Shown here: in pieces, positions 1 to 62,352 of the stretch
Position numbering within the stretch: the first letter of the stretch is position 1
Layout: the number at the start of each line of letters is the position of its first letter
Assembly (NCBI GenBank): GCA_035084275.1
Contig: CM068761.1
Location: 9,176,001 to 9,240,000 of the forward strand
Direction of reading: 5' to 3'
DNA from: Hydrolagus colliei
Taxonomy: Eukaryota
Length of the DNA stretch: 64,000 nucleotides
Notes under the pieces: model-generated
What the model was told of the DNA's origin: nothing
The model's input: only the letters and a program-made list of their open reading frames with translations
Database searches by the model: none
Program-made: the position numbers and the translations under genes

Positions 1-52
1 ACCCAACACAAGAACAAAGAACAGGAGCAATAATAATCCCTGAAGGACTCAC

Positions 53-101
53 AGTGGAGGCAAGTCATCAATGTGGCGAGAAATGGAATCCAAGGCGCCA
101 T
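53..101 (-). CDS. IGLV: Ig light-chain leader exon of a cluster continuing off the left edge
   Basis: ATG at 101 encodes MAPWIPFLATLMTCLH+T, then GTGAGT donor. Same as the leader of cluster A (13374-13422). Confidence 0.93.
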
Positions 102-179
102 GGTGAGGGTTACGGGATCGGTCACAAATTCCAACCGTTTCCTGACAACAACTGACTCTGGGTATCAGCCCGTGGCTCA

Positions 180-234
180 GTTTATGAACTGACCCAATTC
201 TGAACGTCACACAGCGCTGATCAGTTATGCAAAT
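180..234 (-). promoter_or_regulatory. IgL V promoter (octamer ATTTGCAT 227-234, CCAAT, CATAAA TATA-like)
   Basis: Plus-strand ATGCAAAT at 227-234 is ATTTGCAT on the coding strand, the light-chain orientation, ~126 bp upstream of the ATG. Confidence 0.85.
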
Positions 235-1621
235 CCCCCGGGGCCGCCTGGCCCGGCCCGTTCACCTCCACCCGAGAGCCGGGTGACCAGCGGCTCATTG
301 ACAACACTCCACACTCACAGAAATAAAGCACAGGATCAGTGGATTCTCAACTCGAATCTGAGACGTTTATACTTTTGTTGTTCGGTTGGCGGATCATTTA
401 CCAGCGACACATCAATTCAAACAATATGGAGGAAATGGTCATCCGGAAATATCACCAAATATTCACATTCAAAAACTGTGGCATTTTTATGAATAAATGA
501 CATATTTATATAACGTGGTAGATTTGTTGAATTGCAGCTGAAAAGGGTGAAGAATTATAAACTAAATCATGTTTTATAGATAAGTACAAATATTCAAATA
601 TCCCAGTTTGGACTTGGATTCCATTGTAGGTATTTGCTTGTAATAAGTAATAAGAATAATATTTCTTGCATTTGCTGTAGAGAATTTCTTGTCTTCTAAA
701 CGCCTCAGGAACTTCACAGGATGTACTGTTATTGGAAGGCAAGATGGGTTAGTCAAATGCGCTCAGCAATGTCCCACAACCAGGCATCGATTGAAGTGAC
801 CAATTTATCATTATTTTATTATTGTTTAAATGGACGTTAAGTTCAGGTTTCTGTTAATAGTGTCCATGTAGGTAAAGCACGAGTTTCCACACATCAAGTT
901 ATGATGTCAACGAGTCAATTTTACGTTTGTATTGACTTTTTCTTGCTGATTTAACCTAACAATCTACAGGAGTCTCAAGTGGTCTGACTCCCCCACGGCC
1001 TCGTCCTACTAACAACAACAACAACAACAAAATTAGATTGATAAAGCGCCTGTCACGTCGGGAGGATGTGAAAGGCTAAACAGAATTTACGTTTGAGATT
1101 GTATCAGCATGGATTCCCGCAGCTCAATGGTTACAGCGTTTGCAAAGAAGAGATGTGGGTTATTTTGCCGGCAAGGCGAAACCTTGAGCAAGGTTCCTGT
1201 TTCCACACTGACTGACAATAGTCCCTCAATTAACAGGCAATTGTAAAATTGGTCATTTCAATCCAGAACAGTTTGTGGAGCGCTGCTGTGCACAGTTTGC
1301 TGCCTGTCTTGTCCACAAAACTACAGTTAATTCACCATCGACTACCCCAATAACACACTCATCACAGCATCCTTTCACACAACATAAAATAAAAATCCAT
1401 GTATTATTAGAAACCAGAGAAAACAATAAAGAATTTACACATTTGATCACTAGTTAACACATATCTGCCGTTTATTGCAAGCTATGACCTCAATGAATCA
1501 CTTCTGCGTTTGTATTGACTTGTTTTTGCTGATTTAACATAACAAGTTACAGCAGTCTGTATAGGTCAGCGCCAAGGGTCCGACCCGCGAAAAAGAATTA
1601 ACGTTTGAGATTGTTTCACCA

Positions 1622-9630: not shown

Positions 9631-9744
9631 ACCCGCCCAATGAGGCGAGAACCCGCCCAATGAGGCGAGAAGCCGCCCAATGAGGCGAGAACCCGCCCAA
9701 TGAGGCGAGAAGCCGCCCAATGAGGCGAGATCCCGCCCAATCAG
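9631..9744. repeat. 20-bp minisatellite ACCCGCCCAATGAGGCGAGA (GC box overlapping CCAAT), 5 full units plus 1 partial
   Basis: Directly visible. Counterparts at ~22903-22973 (4 boxes), ~36233-36345 (6) and ~51951-51983 (2, one mutated). Confidence 0.92.
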
Positions 9745-10736: not shown

Positions 10737-10742
10737 TTTATT
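10737..10742 (-). promoter_or_regulatory. PolyA signal of cluster A (equivalents 23972-23977, 37326-37331, 54361-54366)
   Basis: AATAAA on the minus strand ~170 nt after each C stop codon, conserved in all four clusters. Confidence 0.8.
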
Positions 10743-10908
10743 GCAAACTCAAACTACTCCACATTTTGATCTGAATTACAACTGCATCGAAATACAAACG
10801 GCGCGATACTGTGACACAGTTTGGCTCGTTATCAAAATGTGGGAATGTCGAATTGAACATTTCTCAAGAAGGCTCCGTGGGCAGTACAGTTCAGTACAGT
10901 TCCCGGAA

Positions 10909-11231
10909 TCATACACAGGTGGATCTGGCGATGGTTGTTTTAAGAGGATCTGCCCGAGCCTCGTGTTTGACCAGACAGGAATACAGCTCGTGTGACTCCC
11001 ACTCGGAGGCTGGCAGAGTCAGATAACTGCTCACACTGTACGTGTTGTCCACCTGCTGCTTGATCGCACTCGTTTCAACACCTTCACTTCTGGCACTGCC
11101 ATCCACAGTCCACTTGACCTCCACAGCTCCCGGGGTAAAATCATTCACCAGACACACCAGGGTCGCCTTGCTCTTTGCTGTGATTTGATCTGGTGACGGC
11201 GGAAGGACAGTCACCGAAGGTGCCCGTGGGT
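10909..11231 (-). CDS. IGLC: Ig light-chain constant exon, cluster A (type II/lambda-like)
   Basis: TTTCCAG acceptor; 323 nt encoding (N)PRAPSVTVLPPSPDQITAKSKATLVCLVNDFTPG..W..SSYLTL..YSCLVKHE..TCV*. Canonical C1-set Cys/Trp residues and penultimate Cys. Confidence 0.97.
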
Positions 11232-12893: not shown

Positions 12894-13422
12894 TGCCAAT
12901 CCCCACTCTGGTCCCTTTACCGAAGAATAAGCCCGATTCCCACACAGCACAGTAATAATCAGCGGCGTCATCCCCCTGAACACTGGAGATGATTAAATCG
13001 CCAGACCTGGAATCCCTGGAGCCCGAGAATCGATCGGAAATTCCCGACATCCTGGTGAAGCTGTTCACTCCATTAGTGTACAGGAGATACTGAGGAGCAT
13101 TCCCCGGCCTTTGCTGGTACCAATACACAGTTTCGCTGCTAATACTGCCCCCAGTCATGGTACATCCCAGGGTCAACTTCTCTCCCAGGGAGGTAGAGAC
13201 CGACGGCGGCTGATGTAAGGCTGGCAGCGAGTTTACACCTGTAAAACAGTAAGTCAGGAGAACACATAACAATACATGATGATTCTCAAATAAAAGGCAA
13301 CTCAAAGCTCTCAGCCCATGTACCCAACACAAGAACAAAGAACAGGAGCAATAATAATCCCTGAAGGACTCACAGTGGAGGCAAGTCATCAATGTGGCGA
13401 GAAATGGAATCCAAGGCGCCAT
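12894..13422 (-). CDS. IGLV: Leader (13422-13374) plus germline-joined VJ exon (13238-12894), cluster A; CDR3 AVWESGLF
   Basis: GTGAGT/TTTTACAG intron; V with C..WYQQ..DYYC running in frame into FGKGTRVGIG, then GTAAGT donor. Spliced L+VJ+C is 717 nt (238 aa). Confidence 0.97.
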
Positions 13423-13500
13423 GGTGAGGGTTGCGGGATCGGTCACAAACTCCAACCGTTTCCTGACAACAACTGACTCTGGGTATCAGCCCGTGGCTCA

Positions 13501-13555
13501 GTTTATGAACTGACCCAATTCTGAACGTCACACGGCGCTGATCAGTTATGCAAAT
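13501..13555 (-). promoter_or_regulatory. IgL V promoter, cluster A (octamer 13548-13555)
   Basis: ATTTGCAT on the coding strand, CCAAT, TGACGTTCA and CATAAA. Confidence 0.85.
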
Positions 13556-24143: not shown

Positions 24144-24466
24144 TCATACACAGGTGGATCTGGCGATGGTTGTTTTAAGAGGATCTGCCCGAGCCTCGTG
24201 TTTGACCAGACAGGAATACAGCTCGTGTGACTCCCACTCGGAGGCTGGCAGAGTCAGATAACTGCTCACACTGTACGTGTTGTCCACCTCCTGCTTGATC
24301 GCACTCGTTTCAACACCTTCACTTCTGGCACTGCCATCCACAGTCCACTTGACCTCCACAGCTCCCGGGGTAAAATCATTCACCAGACACACCAGGGTCG
24401 CCTTGCTCTTTGCTGTGATTTGATCTGGTGACGGCGGAAGGACAGTCACCGAAGGGGCCCGTGGGT
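24144..24466 (-). CDS. IGLC: Ig light-chain constant exon, cluster B
   Basis: 323-nt intact exon, canonical acceptor, nearly identical to cluster A (KQEVD vs KQQVD). Confidence 0.97.
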
Positions 24467-26125: not shown

Positions 26126-26654
26126 TGCCAATCCCCACTCTGGTCCCTTTACCGAAGAATAAGCCCGATTGCCACACAGCACAGTAATAATCAGCGGCGT
26201 CATCCCCCTGAACACTGGAGATGATTAAATCGCCAGACCTGGAATCCCTGGAGCCCGAGAATCGATCGGAAACTCCCGACATCCTGGTGAAGCTGTTCAC
26301 TCCATTAGTGTACAGGAGATACTGAGGAGCATTCCCCGGCCTTTGCTGGTACCAATACACATATTTGCTGCTAATACTGCCCCCAGTCATGGTACAACCC
26401 AGGGTCAACTTCTCTCCCAGGGAGGTAGAGACCGACGGCGGCTGATGTAAGGCTGGCAGCGAGTTTACACCTGTAAAACAGTAAGTCAGGAGAACACATA
26501 ACAATACATGATGATTCTCAAATAACAGGCAAATCAAAGCTCTCAGCCCATGTACCCAACACAAGAACAAGGAACTGGAGCAATAATAATCCCTGAAGGA
26601 CTCACAGTGGAGGCAAGTCATCAATGTGGCGAGAAATGGAACCCAAGGCGCCAT
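26126..26654 (-). CDS. IGLV: Leader (26654-26606) plus germline-joined VJ exon (26470-26126), cluster B; CDR3 AVWQSGLF
   Basis: Intact frame, canonical splice sites, FGKG J motif fused to V. Confidence 0.97.
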
Positions 26655-26732
26655 GGTGAGGGTTACGGGATCGGTCACAAACTCCAACCGTTTCCTGACA
26701 ACAACTGACTCTGGGTATCAGCCCGTGGCTCA

Positions 26733-26787
26733 GTTTATGAACTGACCCAATTCTGAACGTCACACGGCGCTGATCAGTTATGCAAAT
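26733..26787 (-). promoter_or_regulatory. IgL V promoter, cluster B (octamer 26780-26787)
   Basis: ATTTGCAT on the coding strand; same layout as cluster A. Confidence 0.85.
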
Positions 26788-37497: not shown

Positions 37498-37820
37498 TCA
37501 TACACAGGTGGATCTGGCGATGGTTGTTTTAAGAGGATCTGCCCGAGCCTCGTGTTTGACCAGACAGGAATACAGCTCGTGTGTCTCCCACTCGGAGGCT
37601 GGCAGAGTCAGATAACTGCTCACACTGTACGTGTTGTCCTCCTCCTGCTTGATCGCACTCGTTTCAACACCTTCACTTCTGGCGCTGCCATCCACAGTCC
37701 ACTTGACCTCCACAGCTCCCGGGGTAAAATCATTCACCAGACACACCAGGGTCGCCTTGCTCTTTGCTGTGATTTGATCTGGTGACGGCGGAAGGACAGT
37801 CACCGAAGGGGCCCGTGGGT
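37498..37820 (-). CDS. IGLC: Ig light-chain constant exon, cluster C
   Basis: 323-nt intact exon; KQEED and SEWET variants. Confidence 0.97.
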
Positions 37821-39377: not shown

Positions 39378-39909
39378 TGCCAATCCCCACTCTGGTCCCT
39401 TTACCGAAGATAAACGTGTTCGAAACCCAAGCACCACAGTAATAATCAGCGGCGTCATCCCCCTGAACACTGGAGATGATTAAATCGCCAGACCTGGAAT
39501 CCCTGGAGCCCGAGAATCGATCGGAAACTCCCGACATCCTGGTGAAGCTGTTCACTCCATTAGTGTACAGGAGATACTGAGGAGCATTCCCCGGCCTTTG
39601 CTGGTACCAAAACACAGTATAGCTGCTAATACTGCCCCCAGTCATGGTACAACCCAGGGTCAACTTCTCTCCCAGGGAGGTAGAGACCGACGGCGGCTGA
39701 TGTAAGGCTGGCAGCGAGTTTACACCTGTAAAACAGTAAGTCAGGAGAACACATAACAATACATGATGATTCTCAAATAAAAGGCAAATCAAAGCTCTCA
39801 GCCCATGTACCCAACACAAGAACAAGGAACAGGAGCAATAATAATCCCTGAAGGACTCACAGTGGAGGCAAGTCATCAATGTGGCGAGAAATGGAACCCA
39901 AGGCGCCAT
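39378..39909 (-). CDS. IGLV: Leader (39909-39861) plus germline-joined VJ exon (39725-39378), cluster C; CDR3 GAWVSNTFI
   Basis: 348-nt VJ exon in frame, canonical splice sites. Confidence 0.97.
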
Positions 39910-39987
39910 GGTGAGGGTTGCGAGATCGGTCACAAACTCCAACCGTTTCCTGACAACAACTGACTCTGGGTATCAGCCCGTGGCTCA

Positions 39988-40042
39988 GTTTATGAACTGA
40001 CCCAATTCTGAACGTCACACGGCGCTGATCAGTTATGCAAAT
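39988..40042 (-). promoter_or_regulatory. IgL V promoter, cluster C (octamer 40035-40042)
   Basis: ATTTGCAT on the coding strand; same layout as cluster A. Confidence 0.85.
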
Positions 40043-43000
40043 CCCCCGGGGCCGCCTGGCCCGGCCCGTTCACCTCCACCCGAGAGCCGGGTGACCAGCG
40101 GCTCATTGACAACACTTCACACTCACAGGAATAAAGCACAGGATCAGTGGATTCTCAACTCAAATCTGAGACGTTTATACTTTTGTTGTTCGGTTAGCGG
40201 ATCATTTACCAGCGACACATCAATTCAAACAATATGGAGGAAATGGTCATCCGGAAATATCACCAAATATTCATATTCAAAAACTGTGGTATTTTGATGA
40301 ATAAATAACATATCTTGCATAACATGGTAGATACCCTGACTTGTAGCTGAAAGGGTGAAGAATTATACACTAAATAATGTCTTATAAATAAGTACAAATA
40401 TTCAAAAGTCACATTTTGGACTTGGATTGCATTATAGGTATTTCTTTGTAATAAATAATAAGAATAATGTTTCTTGCATTTAAGAGAGATTTTCATTTCT
40501 TCTCGTCGCATCAGGAGCTTCACAGAATGTACAGTACTGTGTATTGGTGAGCGAAATGAAACAATCAAATGCGTACAGCAGTGTTCATAACAGTTTAGGA
40601 TTGAAGTGAGCAATTTGTTATTGTTTTTGGTATTTTTCAAATGCACATTAAATTCAGGTTTCTGTTAATACAGGGAGACAAAACATTAGTTAACACATAT
40701 CTGCCGTTTATTGCAAGCTATGACCTCAATGAATCACTTCTGCGTTTGTATTGACTTGTTTTTGCTGATTTAACATAACAAGTTACAGCAGTCTGTAAAG
40801 GTCAGCGCCAAGGCTCCGACCTGCAAACAGAATTAACGTTTGAAACAATTTTCATCATAGAGTCCTGTAGCTCAATGGTTAGAGCACTTGCAACCAAGAG
40901 ATAAGGATTATTTTCCCGGCAGGGCGAAACCTTGAGAAATGTTTCCTTTCTCCACACTGTCTGACAATAATCCCTCGAAACAAAAATTGGAAATTTCAAT
41001 CCAAGACACATTGTGGGACACTGCTGTGCGCAATTTACTGACTCTCTCACCAACAAAAATACAGTTAATCCACAATTGAGCCCATTAACAAACTCCTCAC
41101 AGCATCCTATTACACCATCAATAATACATGAAAAATCCATATATCATTAGATATCAGAGAAAAAAACAATTGACCTTTTGATCACTTCATCCTTTTTAAA
41201 CAGCTTATTACCAAACACTAGATGGTAATATACAGCATTATTCTATTATACTTTCAAAGACAGCAGAGAACAAGGTGTGGATGGGTTAGGTGAAGTGCTG
41301 ATATTGTAAGGGTACATATTACAGAAGTAGAATGTGGTGGAGGGAAGCAATTACTTTTTATTCAATGAAGAATAATATTTCGAATATAGTCTGATGACTT
41401 GCTTTCACGGAATCTTTAATATAACAGGAAAATATTGTACGTTTTAACCACTTAGTGCAGTTTTAGAATGTGTTGATGTGTTCCACTTATTCTGAAAATA
41501 TCCAGTTTAGCCTCTAACTCCGCCTATTAGTGGGTATAATTATGTAAATAAATACTATTGACGTCTCGTTATTCCTTATGCGCTGTGCTCGCTTTAGCAG
41601 AATAAGTGATTACAGGTTATAAATTGGAGTCCTGTAGCTGAATGGTTAGAACTCGCCTTGCAAGCGAGCGATGTGGGTTCAATTTCCAGACGGGTTAAAC
41701 CTTGGGCAAGTTTCATTACTTCACACGCCTAATAACAAGCCCTCAAAAACAATTAGTAAATTCAATCCACAACTGTATGTGAGACACTGCTGTGCACAAT
41801 TGGCTGCCGCATTTCGCCCACAGATATACAGTCAATTCATTTTACAGTATATTCTGTTTGTGAAGCGATTTTAAAAGTCTAAATAACGTGAAAAGCGCTA
41901 ATAAATAAACACTGTATTTGATATAGCGCATTCCACATCTTATCGACGTCTCAAATGAAAGGATTATTATTATTATTATTATTTCGATTTTTCGGCCGAA
42001 AATCGTATCAAATGTAAAAACCTGTTGAGAGATTTCAAAAAAGCATTATATCCTGAAGCTCTACAAATACAGGTGTTTGTATCTAATTTCAGGCCCTTAA
42101 AAATTATATATTGAGAGATGTTAAATGCTGGCCCTCCACATAGCTCCAAATCACTGACGAGACACTGCCTTGGGACAATATCTAAATATGAAAGGTAAAA
42201 CACAAATCTAATTTCATAATTTTTACATATTTGTGTCTAGCCGTATGGTTATTTCTGGATCATGACTAATCCCAAGTCAAGGAGCACACAAGCCCATGTG
42301 CGTATCTACACCACACTACATTGTGTGAAGGATGCTACATAAACGTGAGTTTTTGTTGATGTTGTTGTTTGAATACTTGTTTTAGAATGCCAACTGGGTG
42401 ACATTCAGCAAATCTATGTGGTTCTCTAGCTCTTTGCTTCCTTTCAATCATCATGTACGTATTGCGTCAGCATCACAATTTTCCTCATACCCTTTTGTTT
42501 GCACACATATATATCTGAAGACAAAGTTAAAAAATGAATCATGCACAAATGAAGGATGACCTCCAAACCAATCACAGATCATTTCCTAGTGCTGAATTCT
42601 ACCATTATTAAATTACCTTGCAATCATGCTGGTTGGATTATTCTTTCTAAATCCATAATACTGATACATTTAGGATTACATTCATTCAGCTCCTTATTTG
42701 GGAGGATGGCTCGAAGGTCGTTGTTGACATCAGCCCATTAGTTTATTGCAACATGGCAGAAAGAGCCATGAACGGAATGACAATTGTTTATTTGGTGGAA
42801 GGATGTCTAGGATACTGCAAAAGCTTATCCTCATCCAAGGTAGAGCAAGTCCAAAAATGCAGTACACCTCCCCACCCTGCATTGCAGTGTCAGCATTGAC
42901 AATGTATGTTCCAACTGTAGACATGGTACTGGAACTCCGAATCCTCTGAATCTTGGGGGGGAATGCTCCCAACTGTGCCAGACAGTCACACTGACACATA

Positions 43001-43537: not shown

Positions 43538-45258
43538 CTTCTCCGTCTACCCCGCCTCGAGGATCCTCTCCTCCAACTCCCGCTGCGAGAGATGCTGGAT
43601 TTCCTCATGACCAAAATCGAGGGAATCAACTCTGCAGTAATTGACCCCCAACTTCCACCTCATCGCCACCTCCCTCCCACACCCCATCTCCTACCCACCC
43701 CTCCTTCCATAGCTTGAACACAATCTTCCCATCCTCCATCATTGAGACTATCTTCTCAATGAAGCTCACCACCTGCTCCCTAGATCCCATCCCCATCCAT
43801 CTCCTCATCACCCAGCTTCACCTTCTAGCCCCTCTAATCACTGACACTATCAAACAGTGCCTCTCATCCAGGAATGTTCCCATTGCCTTCAAAACCACCA
43901 CCATCACCCCCATCCTAAAAAAGCCTTCCCTTGATGCATCGTAGCTTTCTAGCTATCGGCCCATCTCCAACTTCCCATTCCTTTCCAATGTCCTTGAAAG
44001 AGTGGTTGCCTCCCAGTTCCGGTCCTTCTTCACACAGTACTTACTCCTGGAACCCCTCCAATCAGGTTTCCATGCTCTCCACAGCACGGAAACTGCCCTG
44101 GTCACAGTCACAAACAACATTCTAACCATCTGTGACCAGGGCTCCCTTTGCCTCCTCGTCCTCCTTGACCTATTCTTTGCCTTCGCTACCGTGGACCAGG
44201 GTATCCTCCTCCACTGCCTCTCCTCCCTCCGGAACCTGCAAGGATCTGTCGTCGAATGGTTCTATCTCTCCCACCGCCTTCACTTCATCTCTTCCAATGG
44301 CTTCTCCTCCAGCCCCCTCACAGTCACATGTGGCGTTCCCCGGGGCTACGTCCTCGGCCCCCTGCTCTTCACCCTCTTGCGATATTACCCATAGACATGG
44401 GGTGAATTTTCACATGTATGCGGATGACACCCAAATCTGCATATCCGCATCAACCCTCGATTCCACTGGCGTTCTGATTGGATGTCTGTCCGACATCGAG
44501 TCCTGGACCAGGGCAAATTTCCTGCAACTCAAAGTTAACAAGACGGAAGCCCTCCTGATTGGCTCACGTCAGCACCACCGCACGTCAGGCGCCAAAAACT
44601 TCAGCGTTCAAGGCTGCTTTGTCCAACTCTCAAAACCAATCAGGAATCTGGGAGTGTTGTTTGACTCTGAGCTGTCCTTCCTCCCCCATATCTGCTCATG
44701 ACTGGCACAGCCTTCCATCACCTCCGCAATATTGCCAGACTCCGCCACAACCCATGCCGCCATAACCCTCTTTCACATCTTTATCACTTCCAGGCTCGAC
44801 TACAGGAACTCCCTCCTCGTCGGCCTCCGCAGCTCCTCCCTTCACAGGCTGCAAATTATTTGGAACTCTGCAGCCCGTGTACTCTCCCGTACCAGGCTTC
44901 GCAACACATCGCTCCCAACCTCGCCCGTCTCCATTGGCTCCCCGTCACCCAGAGGATCGAAATCAACATACATGTCTTCACTTTCAAGGCCATTCACGGC
45001 CTTGCCCCCTCCTGTCTCTCTGACCGACTGTCTCCCTATCAGCCTGCCCGCACCCTCCGTTCAGCAGACTCAGGGCTGCTTCGCGTCCACCACCCTAACC
45101 ACCCAACCATCGGTGGCCGGGCTTTCAGCCTGTCTGCTCCCATACTGTGGAACTCCCTTCTGCAGCCCATTCACCTTGCTTCCTCCCTTTCCTACTTCAA
45201 GGCCGGTCTCAAGACCTACCTCTTCGTTCACGGCTTTGGCTGTCCCACTTACTGTCCC
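43538..45258 (+). mobile_element. L2-clade LINE ORF2 fragment private to the C-D spacer
   Basis: KLTTCSLDPIP, YRPISNFPFLS, QSGF...HSTETAL, LLDL..AFATVD, FHMYADDTQ, RLDY, all frameshifted. Replaces ~230 bp present in other spacers. Confidence 0.88.
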
Positions 45259-47447: not shown

Positions 47448-49222
47448 AGATTCATAGATTCATAGAATTTTATGGCACAAAAGGAGGCCATTCGGCGCAT
47501 CTAGTCTGTGCCGGCTCTTTGAAAAGAGCGATTCAATCCCACTTCCCTGCCCGCTCCCCATAACCTAATAGACCTGTTCTCCCTAAATAAAGATCTAATT
47601 CCCTTTTAAAAGTTGTTATCGAATCAGCCTCCACCACCTTTTCAGGCAATGCATTCCAGATTCGACCAACTCGCTGAGTGAAAAAATTTCTCCTCAGCTC
47701 CCCTCTGCTTCGGCTTGAAACTATTTTAAATCTGTGACCAAGAGTCACAGATTCGCCCACGAGTGGAAATAGTTTTACTCTATTTGCCCTGTCGAAACCC
47801 CTCATGATCTTATAAACCTCTATTAGGTCTCACCTCAATCTTCTCTGCTCCAGAGAGAATAACCCTAGCCTATCTAGCCTCTCCTCATAGCTGAAGTCCC
47901 TCAATCCTGGCACCATCCTAGTAAATCTTCTTTGTACCTTTTCCAATGTCTTCACATCCTTTCTGTAGTGTCGTGACCAGAATTGAACACAGTATTCCAG
48001 CTGAGGCCTTACCAAAGTCTTATAGAGGTTAGTCAGCACTTCCTGACTTTTGTACTATAGACCCCTATTTATAAAGCCTAGTATCCCATATGCCTTCTTA
48101 ACAGCCTTGTCTGCCTGTCCTGCCACCTTCAACGAGTCACTAACACAAATCTCCAGGTCTCTCTGTTCCTTCACACCATTTAAAATTGTACTATCTAGCC
48201 TATATTGCCTCCCTTTATTTCTTCTCCCAAAATGCATCACCTCACAATTCTCTGCATTAAACTTCATTTGCCATGTGTCTGCCTACTTTACCAATTTGTC
48301 TATATCCTCTTGCAGATGGCTACTATCCTCCTCACTGTTTACTATTCTCCCTAACTTAGTGTCATCTGCAAACTTGGAAACTGTACTCCGTACACCCAAG
48401 TCCAGATCAGTGATGTAGATTACAAACAGCAATGGTCCCAAAACTGATCCCTGTGGCACACCACTGCTCACTTCCCTCCAGTCTCAAAAACAGCCGCTCA
48501 CTACAACTCTCTGCTTTCTGTCACGCAGCCAGTTGTGGATCCACGCTGCCACTGTCCCTTTTACGCCATGGGCTTTTAATTTCCTAATAAGTCTCTCATG
48601 TGGCACTTTGTCAAATGCCTTTTGAAAGTCCATGTAAACTACATCAACTGCGCTACCTTTATCCACCCATTCCGTTACCTCATCAAAAAATTCTATCAGA
48701 TTTGTAAGGCAAGATTTGCCTTTAACAAATCCATGTTGACTGTCCTTCATTAGCCTATATCTTTCTAAGTGAAGATCTACCTTGTCCCTGATTATGCACT
48801 CTCGAAGTTTGCCCACTACCGACGTTAGACTGACTGGTCTGTAGTTACCAGGCTTGTCCTTCTGCCCCTTTTTATATAAGGGAGTAACATTAGCTATCCC
48901 CCAGTCCTCTGGCACGACTCCTGTGTCCAAGGAAGATTGAAAGATCGTGGCCATAGTCCCTGCTATTTGCTCCCGTGCCTCCCTTAGTAACATAGGGTGC
49001 ATCCCAACCGGACCAGGTGACTTATCCACCTTGAGTGACGTCATCCTTTTTAGAACATCCTCTCTGGTTATAATTATTCCATCCTTTTCTCCTACCCTCT
49101 CCTCCAATACCATAGCATTGGCTGTATCCTTTTTTTTTGTGAAAACAGAGGCGAAGTACTCATTCAGTACATCAGCCATGCCCTCTGCCACCACAATGAG
49201 ATTGTGGAGGCAGAGGGCATGA
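47448..49222 (-). mobile_element. 5'-truncated CR1 LINE (RT region and 3' end) private to the C-D spacer
   Basis: PGNYRPVSLTSVVGK, QHGFVKGKSCLTNLIEFF, VYMDFQKAFDKVPH, GVPQGSVLGPLLF, KFADDTKL and an (ATTCTATG)-type tail. Flanks rejoin the uninterrupted CTTCAAGT|GTCTC site of other units. Confidence 0.93.
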
Positions 49223-53508: not shown

Positions 53509-54532
53509 CGCGCTATTGTATTTCATGTTCCTGAGGCCTCCACTGCATCAATTTATAATAATCCTGACAACGATGGAGAGTTATAAGGAATTAAGATACA
53601 AACAGTCGGTTTGGGGGGTTAGCGCTGACACGTGTTGAGTGTAAAGCAATTAAAAGCATCTGCATCATGGCTGAAAATACCAGCAGCCGCGGGTCGGTAA
53701 CATGAATGGTTTTGCTGAGAGTGGATCGGAGAACATGTCAATATGAGGGATTGGATAAGGGAACTGTATAATGGGCTGCAGTGAAATATTGTTCTCACTC
53801 GTTTATTTCCTGACTGTCAGTGACAGCGGGAGGGGGCGAGGGGGGGATACGTTGTGGATTTGAGCCAAAGAACATTGAAATGACGCTCCAACAAGAGCTT
53901 TCCGTCCAATATTAATAGTAAATGGCAACTGATAATCTGCGGAAAATTGGGTGAATGTTGGAATTTAACCCGCCAATAACCACACAGTTTGCTATTGGGA
54001 TTACCAGCCACCTTCCCGCTGCTTGTTCAGCTCGCACCAAGTGTGTAGTCATGGCGTTGGCTTGCGGAACAACAACAACAACAACAACAAATTACATTTA
54101 TAGAGCGCCTTTCAGGAACATTCTTTATTTGTCAGTAAATAATATGATCAATAAAACAGTGTCAGTGATGGCAATGAATCTGTGACTTTATTAAGCGGAG
54201 CTACTTAATAATGAAACAATGTGATTGTTAAGAGCCAGGAAACTAGCAAGAGGCAGAAATGGCATTCAGCTATTCCTAGATAATTGTACATTAATTAGTA
54301 ATCCGCGAATCGCTGCGATAATTTAAAATAGAGAATGAAACAGAAGTAAAACAAGTTTTTTTTATTGCAAACTCAAACTACTCCACATTTTGATTGGAAT
54401 TACATCAGCATCGAAATACAGACGGCGCGATACTGTGACACAGTTTGGCTCGATATCAAAATGTGGGAATGTCGAATTGAACATTTCTCAACAAGGCTCC
54501 GTGGGCAGTACAGTTCAGTACAGTTCCCGGAA

Positions 54533-54855
54533 TCATACACAGGTGGATCTGGCGATGGTTGTTTTAAGAGGATCTGCCCGAGCCTCGTGTGTGACCAGAC
54601 AGGAATACAGCTCGTGTGACTCCCACTCGGAGGCTGGCAGAGTCAGATAACTGCTCACACTGTACGTGTTGTCCACCTCCTGCTTGATCGCACTCGTTTC
54701 AACACCTTCACTTCTGGCACTGCCATCCACAGTCCACTTGACCTCCACAGCTCCCGGGGTAAAATCATTCACCAGACACACCAGGGTCGCCTTGCTCTTT
54801 GCTGTGATTTGATCTGGTGACGGCGGAAGGACAGTCACCGAAGGGGCCCGTGGGT
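54533..54855 (-). CDS. IGLC: Ig light-chain constant exon, cluster D
   Basis: 323-nt intact exon; LVTHE variant. Confidence 0.97.
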
Positions 54856-56333
54856 CTGGAAATAAAGATTCCGTTTTGAAAACATCTGCTGAGAACTTTA
54901 TCATTTCCCTCTGATGGTTTAGCAATATAAAGTGCTCCCCTCTTCACTCCCAATTGATGCGAATCTGAACCTAATCTCGCCACGTTAACCTCCAATATGT
55001 AATCTTTATCTTTTACATTTTGCTACAATTTAAATAGCAATCTGTGCGCTCACTATTGTGATAGATGCTTCTATTGCAACTGAAGCATTGGTATGTTGAG
55101 CACAAGCAAATATAAATTATTGAAACAAGTTTTTTCCGTAGGAGAAAACAACAGAATTCGGTTAATTACGGCCAGAAAACACACTGTACAGAAATATGCA
55201 GCCATTGTAGATTCGCTAAACAAATCGAAAGGAAATATTTCATTAGCAAGAGGCGTGGGTTTGAATAAATATCTTGTAATTGGGTATAATTTACAGACCA
55301 AAGGTTAACAGATCGAATGGATAACAGAAAGGAGTAAAAAGGTTACATTCAAATGCTTTCTGCCGAGTATTTGATTTCGAAACAATTTTTAAACTCTGAG
55401 GAAGAATGTGGTTATTGTTGTGGATGTGTAATGGTTCCACTCTGAGATTCACGTGGATCCAAGTGAGAATGCGTTACAGTGATTAGAGCTACTGGGATAG
55501 AATCGTCTTGAAACAACAACATATTTGTTGCAGAAAGTGTTGACCAGGCACCAGTGTGTTGTGGTTAGACTTCAGTTGCATTTTACACCATCACGTTCAC
55601 CGTGTTTTACAGTTCCCGCTGGATATTATTGTAATCTTTTGTATTTCTATTCGAAACGATCCGTGTCTCTGTTATAACATGAAGTATTAGTGATCCATAT
55701 ACTGATAATAAAATATACATGATTAACAATAAATTAGTATCAGTATTACCATTGTCATTATCATTATACACGGAATATTACTCAGACGAGTAAATTGACT
55801 AAAACAGTTCCATCCCGGAGGTGATTGATATTTGTGTGATGTAGTTTCTATGCAAGCTTCGTAACTATCAAATACAAGCATTCACATTATTATTGTTAGT
55901 ATTATAGACGTGTTGCCAGTGTTTGGAGATAACAACAACAATAATAATTGTAATAATAATAATCCTTGCATTTGATATGCACTTCTCTCGTCTTCTGTTC
56001 ATCTCAAACTTGCAATAAGATTGGTCAATAAGAATAATATGATCTATTACAATTCAACACACTCCATATTGATATCGTTCCTTTCGGGTCAGGAGGATTT
56101 CGCAAAATTATCTAAAACGGCGAAACTGAGATAAAAGAATATTACATTGGTACTGTATACAAGAACCTGTAGTCCAATAACATTCTAGCCAGACATATGC
56201 TTAAATATACTGATGACATTGCAACGGTTAGGAATAAGTTCAGAATTTATTTCACTGAATTCTATGAAGTTATATAAAAACAGAGTTCATCATCGAATAC
56301 TGCACCGGATAAATTATTTAGCAAAATACTTAC

Positions 56334-56877
56334 TGCCAATCCCCAGCTTGGTCCCCGCACCGAAAATACATTGATCCTTTCCCGAAATTGCGTAATACAA
56401 AAAACAGTAATAATCAGCGGCGTCATCCCCCTGAACACTGGAGATGATTAAATCGCCAGACCTGGAATCCCTGGAGCCCGAGAATCGATCGGAAACTCCC
56501 GACATCCTGGTGAAGTTGTTCACTCCATCAGTGTACAGGAGATACTGAGGAGCATTCCCCAGCCTTTGCTGGTACCAATACACTTTAAAATGGTTGATAC
56601 TGAGCCCAGTCTTGGTACAACCCAGGGTCAACTTCTCTCCCAGGGAGGTAGAGACCGACAGCGGCTGATGTAAGACTGGCAGCGAGTTTACACCTGTAAA
56701 ACAGTAAGTCAGGAGAACACATAACAATATATGATGATTCTCAAATAAAAGGCAAATCAAAGCTCTCAGCCCATGTACCCAACACAAGAACAAGGAACTG
56801 GAGCAATAATAATCCCTGAAGGACTCACAGTGGAGGCAAGTCATCAATGTGGCGAGAAATGGAACCCAAGGCGCCAT
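56334..56877 (-). CDS. IGLV: Leader (56877-56829) plus germline-joined VJ exon (56693-56334), cluster D; CDR3 FLYYAISGKDQCI, J FGAGTKLGIG
   Basis: 360-nt VJ exon in frame, canonical splice sites; spliced product 243 aa. Confidence 0.96.
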
Positions 56878-56955
56878 GGTGAGGGTTACGGGATCGGTCA
56901 CAAACTCCAACCGTTTCCTGACAACAACTGACTCTGGGTATCAGCCCGTGGCTCA

Positions 56956-57010
56956 GTTTATGAACTGACCCAATTCTGAACGTCACACGGCGCTGATCAG
57001 TTATGCAAAT
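56956..57010 (-). promoter_or_regulatory. IgL V promoter, cluster D (octamer 57003-57010)
   Basis: ATTTGCAT on the coding strand; same layout as cluster A. Confidence 0.85.
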
Positions 57011-60000
57011 CCCCCGGGGCCGCCTGGCCCGGCCCGTTCACCTCCACCCGAGAGCCGGGTGACCAGCGGCTCATTGACAACACTTCACACTCACAGGAAT
57101 AAAGCACAGGATCAGTGGATTCTCAACTCAAATCTGAGACGTTTATACTTTTGTTGTTCGGTTAGCGGATCATTTACCAGCGACACATCAATTCAAACAA
57201 TGTGGAGGAAATGGTCATCCGGAAATATCACCAAATATTCACATTAAAAAACTGTGGTATTTTGATGAATAAATAACATATTTATATAACGTGGTAGATT
57301 TGTTGAATTGCAGCTGGAAAGGGTGAAGAATTATAAACTAAATCAAGTTTTATAGATAAGTACAAATATTCAAATATCCCAGTTTGGACTTGGATTCCAT
57401 TGTAGGTATTTACTTGTAATAAGTAATCAGACTAATATTTCTTGCATTTGCTGTAGAGATTTTCATGTCTTCTAAACGCCGCAGGAGCTTCTCAGGATGT
57501 ACTGTTATTGGAGGGCAAGATGGGTTAGTCAAATGCGATCAGCAATGTCCCACAACCAGGCAAGGATTGAAGTGACCTATTTATCATTGATTTTATTATG
57601 TTTTAAATGGACGTGAAGTTCAGGTTTCTGTTAATATTTTCCATGGAGGTAAAGCACGAGTTTCCACACATGAAATTATGATGTCAACGAGTCACTTTTA
57701 CGTTTGCATTGACTTTTTCTTGCTGATTTAACCTAACAATTTATAGGAGTCTTAAGAGGTCTGACTGCCCCACGGCTCCGTCCTACTAACAACAACAACA
57801 ACAAAATTACATGCATAAAGCGCCTTTCACGTCGGGAGGATGTGAAAGGCTAAGCAGAATTTACGTTTGAGATTGTATCAGCATGGATTCCCGCAGCTCA
57901 ATGGTTACAGCGTTTGCAAAGAAGAGATATGGGTTATTTTGCCGGCAAGGCGAAACCTTGAGCAAGGTTCCTGTTTCCACGCTGACTGACAATAATCCCT
58001 CGATTTACAGGCAATTGTAAAATTGGTCATTTCAATCCAGAACAGTTTGTGGAGCGCTGCTGTGCGCAGTTTGCTGCCTGTCTTGTCCACAAAACTACAG
58101 TTAATTCACCATCGACTACCCCAATAATACACTTATCACAGTATCCTTTCACACGACATAAAAGAAAAATCCATGTATTATTAGAAATCAGAGAAAACAA
58201 TGAAAAGTTTACACATTTGATCACTAGTTAACACATATCTGCCGTTTATTGCAAGCTATGACTTCAATGAGTCACTTCTGCGTTTGTATTGACTTGTTTT
58301 TGCTGATTTAACATAACAAGTTACAGCAGTCTGTATAGGTCAGCGCCAAGGCTGCGACCTGCGAAACAGAATTAACGTTTGAGATTGTTTCATCACAGTC
58401 CTGTAGCTCAATGGTTAGAGCACTTGCAAGCAAGAGATATGGGTTGTTTTCCCGGCAGGGCGAGACCTTCAGAAAAGTTTCCATTCTCCACACTGTCTGA
58501 CAATAATCCCTCGAAAATAAACAATAATAAAATTAGTCATTTCAATTCAGGACAATTTGTGGATTCCTCTCTGCGCAGTTTGCTGTCCATCTCACCAACA
58601 AAAATACAGTTAATTCACCATTGCCTAATCCAATAATACACTCCTCACAGCATCCTATTACACTCTCAATAACACGTGAAAAATCCATGTTTATTAGACG
58701 TCAGAGAAAAGAATAAATAATTGACACGTTTGATCACTTCATCCTCTTTAAGCAGCTTGTTACTAAACATTAGATGACAACATACAGCATTATTCTATTA
58801 TACATGGAAAGACAGCAGAGAACATGGTGTGGATGGGTTAGGTGAAGTGCTGATATTATAAGATTACATACAATATTACAGAAGTGGATTGTGGTGGAGG
58901 GAAGCAATTACGTTTCATTGAATGAGGAATACGATTTCGAATGTAGTCTGATGATTTGCTTTCACAGAACCTTTAATGTAGCAGGAAAATATGATATGAT
59001 CTAACCGTTCACTGCAGTTTTAGAATGTGTTGATGTGTTCCACTTATTCTGAAAACTCCCAGTTTAGCCCCTGATTCCACCTGTTAGTTGGTAAAACTAT
59101 TGAAATAAATTATATTGACGTCTAGTTATTCCTTATGCGCTGTGCTCGCTTTCGCAGAATAAGTGATTACAGTTTATAACCCAGAGTCCTCTAGCTGAGT
59201 GGTTAGAACTCGCCTTGCAAGCGAGGAATCTGGGTTCAATTCCCAGACGGGTTAAAACTTGGGCAAGTTTCCTTACTCCACATGCCTAATACGAATGCCC
59301 TAAAAAAAGAGTAATTTTATCCACAACTGTATGTGGGACACTGCTGTGCACAATTGGCTGCCGCATTTCACCCACAGATATACCGTCAATTCATTTTACA
59401 GTATATTCTGTTTGTGAAGCGATTTGAAATGTCTAAGTGACGCATAAAGCGCAAATAAATCAACAAATCAATAATCCTTACATTAGATATAGCGCATTCC
59501 ACATCTTATCGGTGTCTCAAATTAAAAGATTATTATTATTATTATTATTTGGATTTTTTCGCCGAAAATCGTATCAAATGTAAAAACCTGTTGAGAGATT
59601 TGAAAAAGCATTACAGCCTGAAGCTCTGCAAATACAGGTGTTTGTACCTAATTTCGGGCCCTTAAAAATTATATATTAAGTGATGTTCATTGCAGGCCTT
59701 GAGCTCAAAATCTTGGTGTCTGGTATTTCATTTCTACCCTACACCACATCAATGTTTCACTCATGTGCCGTCAATATTTCCAGCATCTAAGATTTCAAAA
59801 CCTGAATATTCAACTCCATAGGCTGCAGATCATCGAGAACTTTGCTTTCATGTCTCCTTCTGCTCCTATAGGAGGCTTCATGAAATTATCAACTCCACCC
59901 CTTACAAATCAATTCCACATTCTCTTCACCAAGCCGACTGCCTTGCCTCCTTCACGGTAGGTATCAGGACCTTCGACCACCTGTTTGGCCTCACTGCTAC

Positions 60001-60759: not shown

Positions 60760-62352
60760 AATGAAGTTTAAAACAGAGAAGTATGAGGTGATACACTTTG
60801 GGAGAAGAAATGAGGGGAGGGTGTGAAGGAACAGAGAGAACTGGGGATTTGTGTTAGTGACTCTTTGAAAGTGGCAGAACAGGTAGACAAAGCCGTTAAG
60901 AAGGCATATGGGATACTAGGCTTTTTAAATAGGGGTATAGAGTACAAAAGTCAGGAAGTGCTGATAAACCTCTATAAGACTTTGGTTAGGCCTCAGCTAG
61001 AGTACTGTGTACAATTCTGGTCACCACACTTTAGGAAGGATATTAAGGCATTGGAAAGGGTACAGAGGAGATTTACTAGGATGGTACCAAGAATGAGGGA
61101 CTTCAGCTACGAGGAAAGGCTAGATATGGCTGAATGGAATTCAATGTTAGCAAGTGTGAAATTATTCACCTAGGTAGCAAGAATAAAAGAATAGATTCTT
61201 TTCTAGAGAGGGAGAAGTTAGATAGTGTTAGTGTTCAAAGGGATTTGGGTATCCTTGTACACCAGTTTCAAAAAGTTGGTTTGCAGGTGCAGCAAGCAAC
61301 TAAGAAGGCGAACGGCATGCTAGCGTTCATTTCAAAAGGTTTAGAGTACAAGAGTAGGGAAGTCTTGCTGCAACTGTATAGGGCTCTGGTGAGACCGAGA
61401 GTATTGTGTGCAGTTTTGGTCTCCTTATTTAATAAAGGACATATTGCCTTAGAGGGGGTACAGCGTAGATTCACTAGGTTAGTTCCTGGGATAAGGGGAC
61501 TGATCTATGAGGATAGGTTGAATAAACTAAGGCTGTATTCTCTAGAGTACAGAAGAATTATTGAAACGTGTGAGATTCTTAAAGGGCTAGATAAAGTAGA
61601 CACTGAGGAACTGTTTCCCCTGGTAAGAGAATCTATAACCAGAGATCACAGTCTTAAAATTAAGGGTCAGCCTTTTAGAACAGAGTTGAGGAAACATTTC
61701 TTCACTCAGAGGGTAGTGAATTTATGGAATTCACTATCCCAGAAGGCTGTAGATGCTCAGTCCTTGAATATTTTCAAGGCTGAGACTAATAGATTTTTGA
61801 AAAATAGAGGGATTAGGGGATAGGGCAGGTAATTAGGGTTAGGTGAGAAGATCAGCCATGATCTTATTGAATGGTGGGGCAGGCTCGAAGAGCCGAACGG
61901 CCTACTCCTGCTCCTAATTCTTATGTTCTTCTAGGCTAGGCTTATTCTCTCTAGAACAAAGAAGATTGAGAGAAGACCTAATAGAGGTTGATAAGATTAT
62001 GAGAGGTTTCAACAGGGTGAATAGGGAAAGACTGTTTCCACTGGTGGGCGAATCAGTGACTAGTGGTCACCGATTTAAAATAGTTTCAAAACGAAGCAGA
62101 GGGGAGCTGAGGAGAAATGTTTTCACTCAGCGGGTTGTTCGAATCTGGAATGCATTGCCTGAAAAGGTGGTGGAGGCAGATTCCATAACAGCTTTTAAAA
62201 GGGAACTAGATCTTTATATAGGAAGAGCAGGTCTGTTAGGTTATGGGGAGAGAGCTGGGCAGTGGGATTGAGTTGCTCTGTTTAAAGAGCCGGCACAGAC
62301 TAGATGGGCCGAATGGCCTCCTTTTGTGCCGTATAATTCTATGATTCTATGA
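60760..62352 (+). mobile_element. CR1 LINE 3' fragment (same family as 47448-49222), interrupted by a second CR1
   Basis: [29 protein letters not shown] continues after the insertion as ..REDLIEV.KIMRGF..; tail ATTCTATGATTCTATG. Confidence 0.9.
61126..61930 (+). mobile_element. Second-subfamily CR1 LINE fragment nested in the host CR1
   Basis: EFNVSKCEIIHLG..KKANGMLAFI..LYRALVRP..EGVQRRFTRL, with its own 3' end CCTACTCCTGCTCCTAATTCTTATGTTCTT. Confidence 0.85.

What the first reader, a model, noticed from the sequence alone, without database searches (positions are those of the whole stretch)
56580..56615. CDR1-focused runs of contiguous substitutions in germline V genes, resembling shark somatic hypermutation
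Seen: D versus A has 13 substitutions in ~30 nt of CDR1 (ATG ACT GGG GGC AGT ATT AGC AGC GAA ACT to AAG ACT GGG CTC AGT ATC AAC CAT TTT AAA), including a run of 6 adjacent changes. The remaining ~260 nt of V up to the second Cys has only 7. A, B and C differ in the same two codons right after AGC AGC (GAA ACT, AAA TAT, TAT ACT), nearly all replacement changes. Known: AGC is an AID WRC hotspot, and shark light-chain hypermutation characteristically yields tandem substitutions. Inference: strong diversifying selection, micro-conversion, or AID-like mutation fixed in the germline.
Basis: partly seen in the sequence, partly recalled or inferred. Interest (0 to 1): 0.72.

Follow-up and report, generated by a model that had tools for sequence, protein, structure and literature searches.

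The report
Germline CDR1 variation in ratfish lambda genes
Four tandem, already-joined antibody lambda light-chain genes of a ratfish are almost identical except in short patches of the antigen-binding loops. This pattern is real but already known for cartilaginous fish, and selection plus gene conversion explains it better than antibody-style hypermutation in the germline.

Summary
Gene D differs from gene A at 13 positions within CDR1, including a run of 6, against 7 in the other 251 nt of V (P = 2.6e-8). A, B and C differ at the same two CDR1 codons, always by replacement changes.

The window is a minus-strand tandem array of four germline-joined (VJ-fused) lambda/type II clusters. The animal is a chimaera (95-96% identical to a Hydrolagus colliei light chain), not a shark.

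The array is a mosaic:
- The promoter-leader-intron-V block and the C-exon block are at most 1-3% divergent, synonymous sites and the leader intron included.
- The J-C introns of C and D are 30-45% divergent.
- CDR1 and CDR3-J are unhomogenised islands inside the V block.

The run of 6 is what four saturated codons give (9 of 12 nt differ; P = 0.36-0.45). WRC/GYW enrichment appears in one polarised test (P = 0.009). It does not appear in unpolarised tests or in three other species. The leader intron is spared.

The same CDR patches with 2-4-nt runs occur in elephant shark, skate and stingray germline lambda genes. CDR-focused, replacement-rich differences among germline-joined clusters were reported in 1995.

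Verdict: this is an ordinary new member of a known kind, and the hypermutation reading is not supported.

The parts
56578..56616 (-). CDR1 of lambda gene D (TKTGLSINHFKVY). This is the 39-nt Cys-to-Trp interval that holds the reported 13-substitution patch, at window 56584-56612.
56334..56693 (-). Germline-joined VJ exon of gene D. It covers FR1 to J in one open frame with no RSS. CDR2 is 56500-56532. CDR3+J is 56334-56403, with a CDR3 five codons longer than in A/B, an extra Cys, and the J motif FGAGTKLGIG.
56829..56877 (-). Leader exon of gene D. The leader intron is 56694-56828 and the octamer ATTTGCAT is at 57003-57010.
54533..54855 (-). C-lambda exon of gene D (C1-set domain). The J-C intron is 54856-56333.
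12894..13422 (-). Gene A: leader exon 13374-13422, VJ exon 12894-13238, CDR1 13123-13161 (TMTGGSISSETVY), hypervariable codons 13129-13134.
10909..11231 (-). C-lambda exon of gene A.
26126..26654 (-). Gene B: leader exon 26606-26654, VJ exon 26126-26470, CDR1 26355-26393 (TMTGGSISSKYVY). Its C exon is 24144-24466.
39378..39909 (-). Gene C: leader exon 39861-39909, VJ exon 39378-39725, CDR1 39610-39648 (TMTGGSISSYTVF). Its C exon is 37498-37820.
56404..57197 (-). Homogenised promoter-leader-intron-V block of unit D. The equivalents are about 12949-13742 in A, 26181-26974 in B and 39436-40229 in C. Outside CDR1 it is at most 1.5% divergent between units, although the flanks are up to 25-45% divergent.
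53540..54932 (-). Homogenised C-exon + 3' flank block of unit D, equivalent to 9934-11308 in A. Divergence between units is 1-4%.
1..420 (-). Promoter and leader of a fifth cluster, cut off by the window start (position 1 aligns with 13322 of unit A).

Best explanation
The window holds a tandem array of lambda (type II) light-chain clusters whose V and J are already fused in the germline. Each gene therefore encodes one fixed V domain. For this isotype, the diversity available before somatic mutation is the set of differences between clusters.

The array evolves in concert. Gene conversion or unequal crossing-over keeps the promoter, leader, leader intron, frameworks and C exon nearly identical. 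The antigen-contact patches stay different: the CDR1 tip (about Kabat L29-L32) and CDR3-J.

Among A, B and C, the two-codon differences are replacement-only changes at the classical hypervariable positions. I read this as diversifying selection.

Gene D is an older lineage, with its own J, J-C intron and CDR3. Its frameworks have been overwritten by its neighbours. Its CDR1 is a 29-nt patch of separate ancestry, saturated at four codons with dN about equal to dS. That patch is either a relic that conversion never crossed or a micro-conversion from a paralogue outside the window.

Shown: the mosaic, the clustering, the replacement bias, and recurrence of the pattern in other species. Inferred: that selection, and possibly the dense mismatches themselves, keep the patches from being homogenised, and which of the two origins applies to D's patch.
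For: Identity and organisation:
- Each gene has a leader, a fused VJ exon and a C exon, with an octamer upstream. Units repeat about every 13.2 kb on the minus strand.
- The proteins carry V-set and C1-set domains, and the best PDB matches are lambda chains.
- A-C are 95-96% identical to H. colliei AAA59369.1.
- Lambda genes are germline-joined in all cartilaginous fish studied (PMC5192425).

Mosaic structure:
- The V block shows 10/790 differences for A-C, against 82/447 just upstream and 357/1136 in the J-C intron (P = 5e-28 and 2e-78).
- The C block is 1-4% divergent.
- Framework synonymous divergence (pS) is 0-0.02, and the leader intron shows 2-4 differences in 135 nt.
- Incompatible site partitions occur within 500 bp: AB|CD against AC|BD.

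CDR1:
- Among A/B/C, pN is 0.10-0.16 and pS is 0.
- For D, pS is 0.29-0.34 and pN is 0.31-0.35. This matches the roughly 32% divergence of D's J-C intron.

Generality:
- Callorhinchus milii: two joined lambda genes are identical over about 750 bp except for two CDR3 patches that include a 4-nt run, in a 94% background.
- Rhinoraja longicauda: CDR1 and CDR3 patches with 2- and 4-nt runs.
- Hemitrygon akajei: CDR variable-site density is 25% against 14.6% in non-coding DNA (P = 0.0105). The codon after AGT AGC has five states.
- Anderson et al. 1995 reported CDR-focused, replacement-rich differences among at least 89 germline-joined skate clusters (PMC2192082 abstract).
Against: - No donor for D's CDR1 patch exists in the 64 kb (no shared k-mer of 11 or more). 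No D-like CDR1 appeared among the 188 hits (120 inspected).
- D's CDR1 departs from a motif (T-M/L-S/T-G-G-S-I/L-G/S-S) conserved across cartilaginous-fish lambda chains. It is therefore derived, not an ancient alternative type.
- Synonymous sites in FR1 and FR2 right next to the patch are identical between D and B/C (0 synonymous differences over the frameworks' ~54 synonymous sites). A relic would have to be trimmed to within a few nucleotides of the patch.
- A polarised test gives a modest WRC/GYW excess in the V block.
- Only four paralogues are available.
Confidence: 0.65

Rival explanations
1. AID-like, hypermutation-type mutagenesis acted on these transcribable joined genes in germ cells, or mutated somatic copies fed back into the germline. 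This left CDR1-focused tandem substitutions that became fixed.
For: - CDR serines are AGY codons and framework serines are TCN codons: 4:1 against 1:10, P = 0.013. D has lost 3 of the 4 CDR AGY codons, two of them by AGC>AAC.
- Polarised lineage-specific changes in the leader-intron-V block fall on WRC/GYW targets 9/24 times, against 25/175 in control flanks (P = 0.009). Without CDR1 the count is 5/12, all G>A or C>T (P = 0.027).
- Runs of 2-4 nt in germline CDR patches recur in three other species.
- Somatic hypermutation in sharks gives tandem changes (PMC5931798).
- RAG-like activity in shark germ cells has been proposed (PMC2193156).
Against: - Unpolarised tests show no WRC/GYW excess in any window pair, in C. 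milii or in Rhinoraja (P = 0.23-0.86).
- Six polarised Hemitrygon paralogues give 1/16 CDR changes at hotspots, against 97/649 in non-coding DNA.
- The leader intron has 17 hotspot positions but only 1 D-specific change.
- In Hemitrygon, the first 1 kb of the J-C intron is no more variable than the rest (15.7% against 15.5%).
- The run of 6 exceeds the 2-4 nt typical of shark tandem events and is expected from saturation (P = 0.36-0.45).
- Control flanks also carry tandem pairs (10 among 175 singletons).
- In Hemitrygon, adjacency is explained by local density.
Confidence: 0.08
2. Ordinary point mutations accumulated stepwise in CDR1 after recent duplication and were driven to fixation by very strong positive selection alone. 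No conversion or block event was involved.
For: - All A/B/C CDR1 differences are nonsynonymous.
- They sit at positions that are hypervariable in other species.
- CDR variable-site density exceeds the neutral density in Hemitrygon.
Against: - For D this needs 13 fixed changes in 39 nt while neighbouring intron and synonymous sites changed 0-3%, a rate at least 10-15 times neutral. It would also raise apparent synonymous change to pS about 0.3, including one clean silent change, ATT>ATC.
- It does not explain the sharp steps in divergence or the identical synonymous sites and intron beside 30-45% divergent J-C introns.
- In C. milii, 7 substitutions plus an indel sit in CDR3 with 0 differences in about 740 flanking nt.
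Confidence: 0.15
3. Assembly or somatic artefact: the variant CDR1 reflects mis-assembled reads or hypermutated B-cell DNA rather than the germline.
For: Tandem near-identical 13-kb units are hard to assemble. No reads were available to check.
Against: - The window has no gaps.
- D also differs coherently in CDR3, J, the J-C intron and its spacer.
- An independent H. colliei sequence varies at the same two CDR1 codons and shares D's CDR2 Asp.
- The same pattern is seen in four other genome assemblies.
- Polyclonal somatic variants would not reach the consensus (inference).
Confidence: 0.03

Closest known systems
Germline-joined lambda (type II) light-chain clusters of cartilaginous fish, including Hydrolagus colliei AAA59369.1
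   Same: The organisation is the same: leader, fused VJ exon, intron, C exon, repeated as clusters. Genes A-C are 95-96% identical in protein to the H. colliei sequence. Lambda genes are joined in all species studied.
   Different: These are new genomic paralogues. Gene D has an atypical CDR1, a long CDR3 with an extra Cys, and a different J.
[quoted passage not shown] 1995, PMC2192082)
   Same: Differences between germline-joined clusters are concentrated in the CDRs, and replacement changes exceed neutral ones. That is the same phenomenon as here.
   Different: The isotype and lineage differ. That abstract does not describe a mosaic of homogenised blocks with CDR islands.
Somatic hypermutation with tandem substitutions in sharks (Lee et al. 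2002, as cited in PMC5931798)
   Same: Both show contiguous base changes, CDR enrichment and AGC/WRC motifs in the CDRs.
   Different: Shark hypermutation is somatic, gives runs of 2-4 nt, and spreads over the V region and its flanks. Here the changes are in germline consensus sequence and confined to a 29-nt patch. The intron is spared, and hotspot enrichment is not reproducible.
Concerted evolution with diversifying selection in immune multigene families (MHC and Ig V genes; Ohta-type models; from my own knowledge)
   Same: Conserved parts are homogenised by conversion, while ligand-contact codons stay diverse. Divergence shows sharp steps, and site partitions are incompatible.
   Different: No donor was found for D's patch. 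Tract ends were inferred from only four copies.
Soma-to-germline feedback hypothesis for V genes (Steele and colleagues; e.g. PMC5704389, PMC7064991)
   Same: It rests on the same observation: germline V genes show a Wu-Kabat pattern resembling selected somatic mutants.
   Different: The hypothesis is unproven. Nothing here requires it, and the introns show no such footprint.

Membership tests
Immunoglobulin lambda (type II) light chain, germline-joined cluster | V-set domain followed by a C1-set domain, with closest relatives being lambda chains | tested here: met
   Pfam V-set E = 6e-16 and C1-set E = 2e-28. The top hits are H. colliei and C. milii Ig light/lambda chains. The best PDB matches are lambda chains.
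Immunoglobulin lambda (type II) light chain, germline-joined cluster | V and J are contiguous in one exon, with no recombination signal sequences between them | tested here: met
   In all four genes a continuous open frame runs from FR1 through FGxGT..GIG to a GTAAGT splice donor.
Immunoglobulin lambda (type II) light chain, germline-joined cluster | Cluster organisation (L-VJ-C repeated), each cluster with its own octamer promoter | tested here: met
   There are four complete units plus one truncated unit, repeating every 13.2-17 kb. ATTTGCAT lies about 125 nt upstream of each ATG.
AID / somatic-hypermutation footprint | Changes enriched at WRC/GYW targets relative to neighbouring unselected DNA | tested here: inconclusive
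   The polarised test gives 9/24 against 25/175 (P = 0.009). Unpolarised tests give P = 0.23-0.86. Hemitrygon gives 1/16 against 97/649.
AID / somatic-hypermutation footprint | Mutation domain spreading about 1-2 kb downstream of the promoter, including the leader and J-C introns | tested here: not met
   The leader intron has 1 D-specific change in 135 nt despite 17 hotspot positions. In Hemitrygon the J-C intron shows no gradient.
AID / somatic-hypermutation footprint | Excess of 2-5-nt tandem substitutions beyond what local substitution density gives | tested here: not met
   A run of 6 or more has P = 0.36-0.45 under four-codon saturation, and adjacent pairs give P = 0.17. In Hemitrygon, adjacency matches local density. 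Control flanks also contain tandem pairs.
AID / somatic-hypermutation footprint | AID expressed and the locus transcribed in the cells where the mutations arise (here, germ cells) | not testable with these tools
   No expression data or reads were available.
Concerted evolution by gene conversion or unequal crossing-over | Sharp steps in paralogue divergence that include synonymous and intronic sites | tested here: met
   V and C blocks are at most 1-4% divergent against 18-45% in the flanks (P down to 1e-106). Framework pS is 0-0.02.
Concerted evolution by gene conversion or unequal crossing-over | Phylogenetically incompatible sites within short distances | tested here: met
   AB|CD at columns 3, 14, 20 and 148 against AC|BD at columns 390 and 479. 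AAA59369.1 shares variants with A, B, C and D in turn.
Concerted evolution by gene conversion or unequal crossing-over | An identifiable donor for the converted patch (D's CDR1) | tested here: not met
   No match of 11 nt or more exists elsewhere in the window. The rest of the genome was not available.
Diversifying selection on CDRs | Nonsynonymous rate exceeds the synonymous or neutral rate at contact codons, recurrently at the same positions | tested here: met
   A/B/C CDR1 has pN 0.10-0.16 against pS 0 and a neutral rate of about 0.015. The same positions vary in Hemitrygon and Rhinoraja. CDR variable-site density is 25% against 14.6% (P = 0.0105). For D's patch, dN is about equal to dS.

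The most novel reading that the evidence does not exclude
A germline-active process creates short clustered or contiguous changes specifically in the CDRs of non-rearranging (germline-joined) light-chain genes of cartilaginous fish. One possible form is AID or error-prone repair acting on octamer-driven transcription in germ cells. Another is very short patch conversion. Either would renew an inherited repertoire while conversion keeps the frameworks uniform. The near-perfect flanks around multi-nucleotide CDR patches in ratfish, elephant shark and skate do not exclude this.
Probability: 0.08. Interest if true: 0.85.

Novelty: new member of a known kind. Interest (0 to 1): 0.3.

Why it matters
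Germline-joined light chains cannot use V-J recombination, so their inherited CDRs are the whole pre-immune contribution of this isotype.

The window gives a clean genomic picture of how that diversity is kept. Frameworks, promoter and C exon are homogenised, while 10-30-nt antigen-contact patches stay different. The same picture appears in four cartilaginous-fish lineages.

This is useful for annotating these arrays and as a model of conversion acting against diversifying selection. It does not, on present evidence, reveal a new mutational mechanism. If germline hypermutation were shown, it would matter greatly, but the tests possible here argue against it.

Tried and rejected
- Donor search for D's CDR1 patch in the window: nothing of 11 nt or more was found. 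Donor searches for the C. milii CDR3 patches in about 47 kb also found none.
- D-like CDR1 among homologues: only one other member of this V family exists in the protein collection (AAA59369.1), and it is A-like. The genome of the window is not in that collection, so no further paralogues could be fetched.
- A codon-deletion (shifted-alignment) explanation for GAA ACT / AAA TAT / TAT ACT was considered and rejected. It needs three independent one-codon deletions, and the 13-residue CDR1 length is ancestral.
- D's CDR1 as an ancient alternative lambda CDR1 type was rejected, because the A-type motif is the one conserved across Chondrichthyes.
- Relaxed constraint or pseudogenisation of D does not explain a 15-fold local excess of changes. 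D's ORF, splice sites and octamer are intact.
- The polarised WRC/GYW signal was followed up with unpolarised tests and a six-paralogue stingray data set and did not hold.
- Full texts of Rast 1994, Hohman 1993, Lee 2002 and Lee 2008 could not be read. Statements about them rest on citing papers or on my own knowledge.

Full report
**What is there**

The reported letters lie on the minus strand. A FR2 motif search found four copies, at 13.1, 26.3, 39.6 and 56.6 kb. Self-BLAST shows a tandem array of units about 13.2 kb long, with the C-D interval about 17 kb, and a fifth unit truncated at the window start.

Each unit has, in order:
- an octamer ATTTGCAT;
- a 49-nt leader exon;
- a 135-nt leader intron;
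- a single exon running from FR1 through CDR3 and J (FGxGT..GIG) to a GTAAGT donor;
- a 1.5-1.7-kb J-C intron;
- a C exon.

V and J are therefore fused in the germline, with no RSS. The spliced proteins carry V-set and C1-set domains. Their closest solved relatives are lambda chains. The best database hit is a Hydrolagus colliei light chain, AAA59369.1, which is 95-96% identical to genes A-C and 88% identical to D. The next hits are Callorhinchus and elasmobranch lambda chains.

The animal is therefore a chimaera, H. colliei or a close relative, not a shark. Lambda (type II) genes are reported to be germline-joined in every cartilaginous fish studied (PMC5192425).

**Checking the observation**

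In a four-way MAFFT alignment, A and D differ at 13 positions inside CDR1, all within 29 nt, including a run of six. They differ at 7 positions in the remaining 251 nt of the V exon up to the second Cys.

The clustering cannot be chance. The hypergeometric P is 2.6e-8, and no permutation out of 200,000 reached 13 differences in a 30-nt window.

A, B and C differ at the two codons after AGC AGC (E-T, K-Y, Y-T). C also has Y>F at the last CDR1 codon. All of these are replacement changes. The independent H. colliei sequence has E-Y at the same two codons.

Divergence along the units is a mosaic.

- **V block.** From about 320 bp upstream of the ATG to the end of FR3, all four units differ by at most 1.5% outside CDR1. 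This includes the leader intron (2-4 differences in 135 nt) and framework synonymous sites (pS 0-0.02).
- **C block.** The C exon plus about 1.4 kb downstream is 1-4% divergent.
- **Between the blocks.** The J-C introns of C and D differ from A/B and from each other by 30-45% in alignable columns, with many indels. The region upstream of C's V block is 10-25% divergent.

The steps are abrupt. For A-C, the counts are 10/790 in the V block, 82/447 upstream and 357/1136 in the intron (P = 5e-28 and 2e-78). Within the promoter-leader region, sites supporting AB|CD lie next to sites supporting AC|BD.

Purifying selection cannot hold intron and synonymous sites at 1% beside 30% neighbours. This is concerted evolution by conversion or unequal exchange. 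Within the homogenised V block, CDR1 and CDR3-J are the islands that were not homogenised.

Gene D also has its own J (FGAGTKLGIG against FGKGTRVGIG), a CDR3 five codons longer with an extra Cys, and its own J-C intron. It is an older lineage whose conserved parts now look like its neighbours.

**Testing the hypermutation reading**

- **Tandem runs.** Given 13 changes in CDR1, a run of 6 or more has P = 0.053 (30 nt) or 0.014 (39 nt). The last four codons differ at 9 of 12 nt, which is the 75% expected at saturation. Under that condition a run of 6 or more has P = 0.36-0.45. Adjacent pairs are not in excess (P = 0.17). Control flanks also contain tandem pairs, 10 among 175 lineage-specific changes. 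Shark somatic tandem events are 2-4 nt long (PMC5931798).
- **Hotspots, polarised test.** Polarising by the majority state, 9 of 24 lineage-specific changes in the leader-intron-V block fall on WRC/GYW targets, against 25 of 175 in control flanks (P = 0.009). Without CDR1 the count is 5 of 12, all G>A or C>T (P = 0.027). This is the only result in favour of the reading.
- **Hotspots, other tests.** Unpolarised tests on all six window pairs, on a C. milii pair and on a Rhinoraja pair show no excess (P = 0.23-0.86). A polarised analysis of six Hemitrygon paralogues gives 1/16 for CDR1+2, against 97/649 for non-coding DNA.
- **Spread.** The leader intron has 17 hotspot positions 100-200 nt from CDR1 but only one D-specific change. 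In Hemitrygon, the first 1 kb of the J-C intron is as variable as the rest (15.7% against 15.5%). A transcription-coupled mutator should mark these introns.
- **Codon bias.** CDR serines are AGY and framework serines are TCN (4:1 against 1:10, P = 0.013). This is the known bias that targets somatic mutation to CDRs and is conserved in cartilaginous fish (PMC5118421). It shows that the genes are built for mutation in B cells, not that they were mutated in germ cells.

**What the patch in D looks like**

In D's CDR1, pS (0.29-0.34) equals pN (0.31-0.35). Framework pS is 0-0.02. The 33% divergence of CDR1 equals that of D's J-C intron (32%) and of CDR3+J (38%).

Selection on single point mutations would raise dN only. 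It would also need a rate 10-15 times neutral. The patch therefore behaves as a block with a different history from its flanks.

Two origins are possible:
- It is a relic that conversion never crossed.
- It is a micro-conversion from a paralogue outside the window.

Several observations bear on the choice:
- No donor lies in the 64 kb.
- D-specific changes outside CDR1 also cluster near it, at a median distance of 59 nt. P is 0.0096 over the whole block and 0.064 within the transcribed part. This fits a tract of about 200 nt.
- Against a simple relic, synonymous sites in the adjoining FR1 and FR2 are identical to those of B/C.
- D's CDR1 departs from a motif conserved across cartilaginous-fish lambda chains, so it is derived.

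I cannot decide between the two origins with four copies.

**Related loci**

- **Callorhinchus milii.** Lambda clusters are also joined and tandem, about 12 kb apart. Two genes 20.5 kb apart are identical over about 750 bp of promoter, leader, intron, VJ and intron, except for two CDR3 patches: CTGG/GGAA, and CAT GAC ATC / TAT --- CCC. The surrounding 3.2 kb is 94% identical.
- **Rhinoraja longicauda.** Two neighbouring genes in a 95.5% background differ by 6 changes in 13 nt of CDR1 (including GG>AA) and by 7 in 13 nt of CDR3 (including CTGA>AAAG). FR2-FR3 has 1 change in 185 nt.
- **Protein-level paralogues.** Genome-annotated paralogues of Hemitrygon (12) and Rhinoraja (8 and 6) vary mainly at the CDR1 tip, the start of CDR2, and CDR3.
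- **Hemitrygon DNA.** In six Hemitrygon genes, the codon after AGT AGC has five states. CDR1+2 variable-site density is 25% against 14.6% in non-coding DNA (P = 0.0105). Adjacency is explained by local density.
- **Prior report.** Anderson et al. (1995) reported, for at least 89 germline-joined skate clusters, that differences concentrate in the CDRs and that replacements exceed neutral changes (PMC2192082 abstract).

**Conclusion**

The finding is a correct and careful reading of real sequence. It describes a known property of germline-joined light-chain families in cartilaginous fish, here in new ratfish paralogues.

The best explanation is diversifying selection on antigen-contact codons in a family that is otherwise homogenised by conversion. 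D's CDR1 is a block of separate ancestry.

One possibility is that dense contiguous mismatches are what survives homogenisation, because isolated differences are co-converted while dense patches block or escape heteroduplex repair. If so, that would also explain why the surviving differences look like runs. This is inference and was not tested.

The germline-AID reading keeps a small probability because of one polarised hotspot test and the recurrence of 2-4-nt runs across species.

Noticed in passing
window 1-420: Promoter and leader of a fifth lambda cluster, cut off by the window edge (position 1 aligns with 13322 of unit A). The array therefore continues beyond the window.
   Followed up: partly
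window 44132-44701 (+) and 48484-49194 (-): Reverse-transcriptase (RVT_1) ORF fragments (E = 3.9e-6 and 1.5e-16) lie in the enlarged spacer between units C and D. This is probably a LINE-type insertion and accounts for the 17-kb interval. Inverted matches link 47452-48177 with 60820-62352.
   Followed up: partly
window 9630-9741, 22902-22973, 36234-36345: A 20-bp minisatellite, AACCCGCCCAATGAGGCGAG (3.6-5.6 copies), occurs once per spacer in units A, B and C. It was not detected in unit D.
   Followed up: no
window 56334-56403 (gene D CDR3+J): D's CDR3 is five codons longer than in A/B and contains an unpaired Cys (CFLYYAISGKDQCIFGAG). Its J differs by two 3-nt contiguous runs (AAA>GCG, GAG>AGC). 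D also has Pro>Leu in FR1 and FR2. The gene may be functionally divergent or under relaxed constraint, yet its ORF, splice sites and octamer are intact.
   Followed up: partly
L002:1561-2312 vs L002:22115-22870 (Callorhinchus milii): Two germline-joined lambda genes are 100% identical over about 750 bp, except for a 4-nt run and an 8-nt indel-containing patch in CDR3. The background is 94% identical. This is the sharpest example of the mosaic.
   Followed up: partly
L005-L010 (Hemitrygon akajei), CDR1 codon after AGT AGC: This one codon has five states (ATT, AAT, TAT, AGA, ACA) among six paralogues, several of them differing by adjacent doublets. It is the same structural position as the hypervariable codons in the window.
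   Followed up: yes
window 4000-8000, 18000-20000, 32000-34000: G-rich stretches with strong GC skew (0.19-0.39) recur once per unit in the inter-cluster spacer. They look like an interspersed repeat and had no Pfam hit.
   Followed up: no
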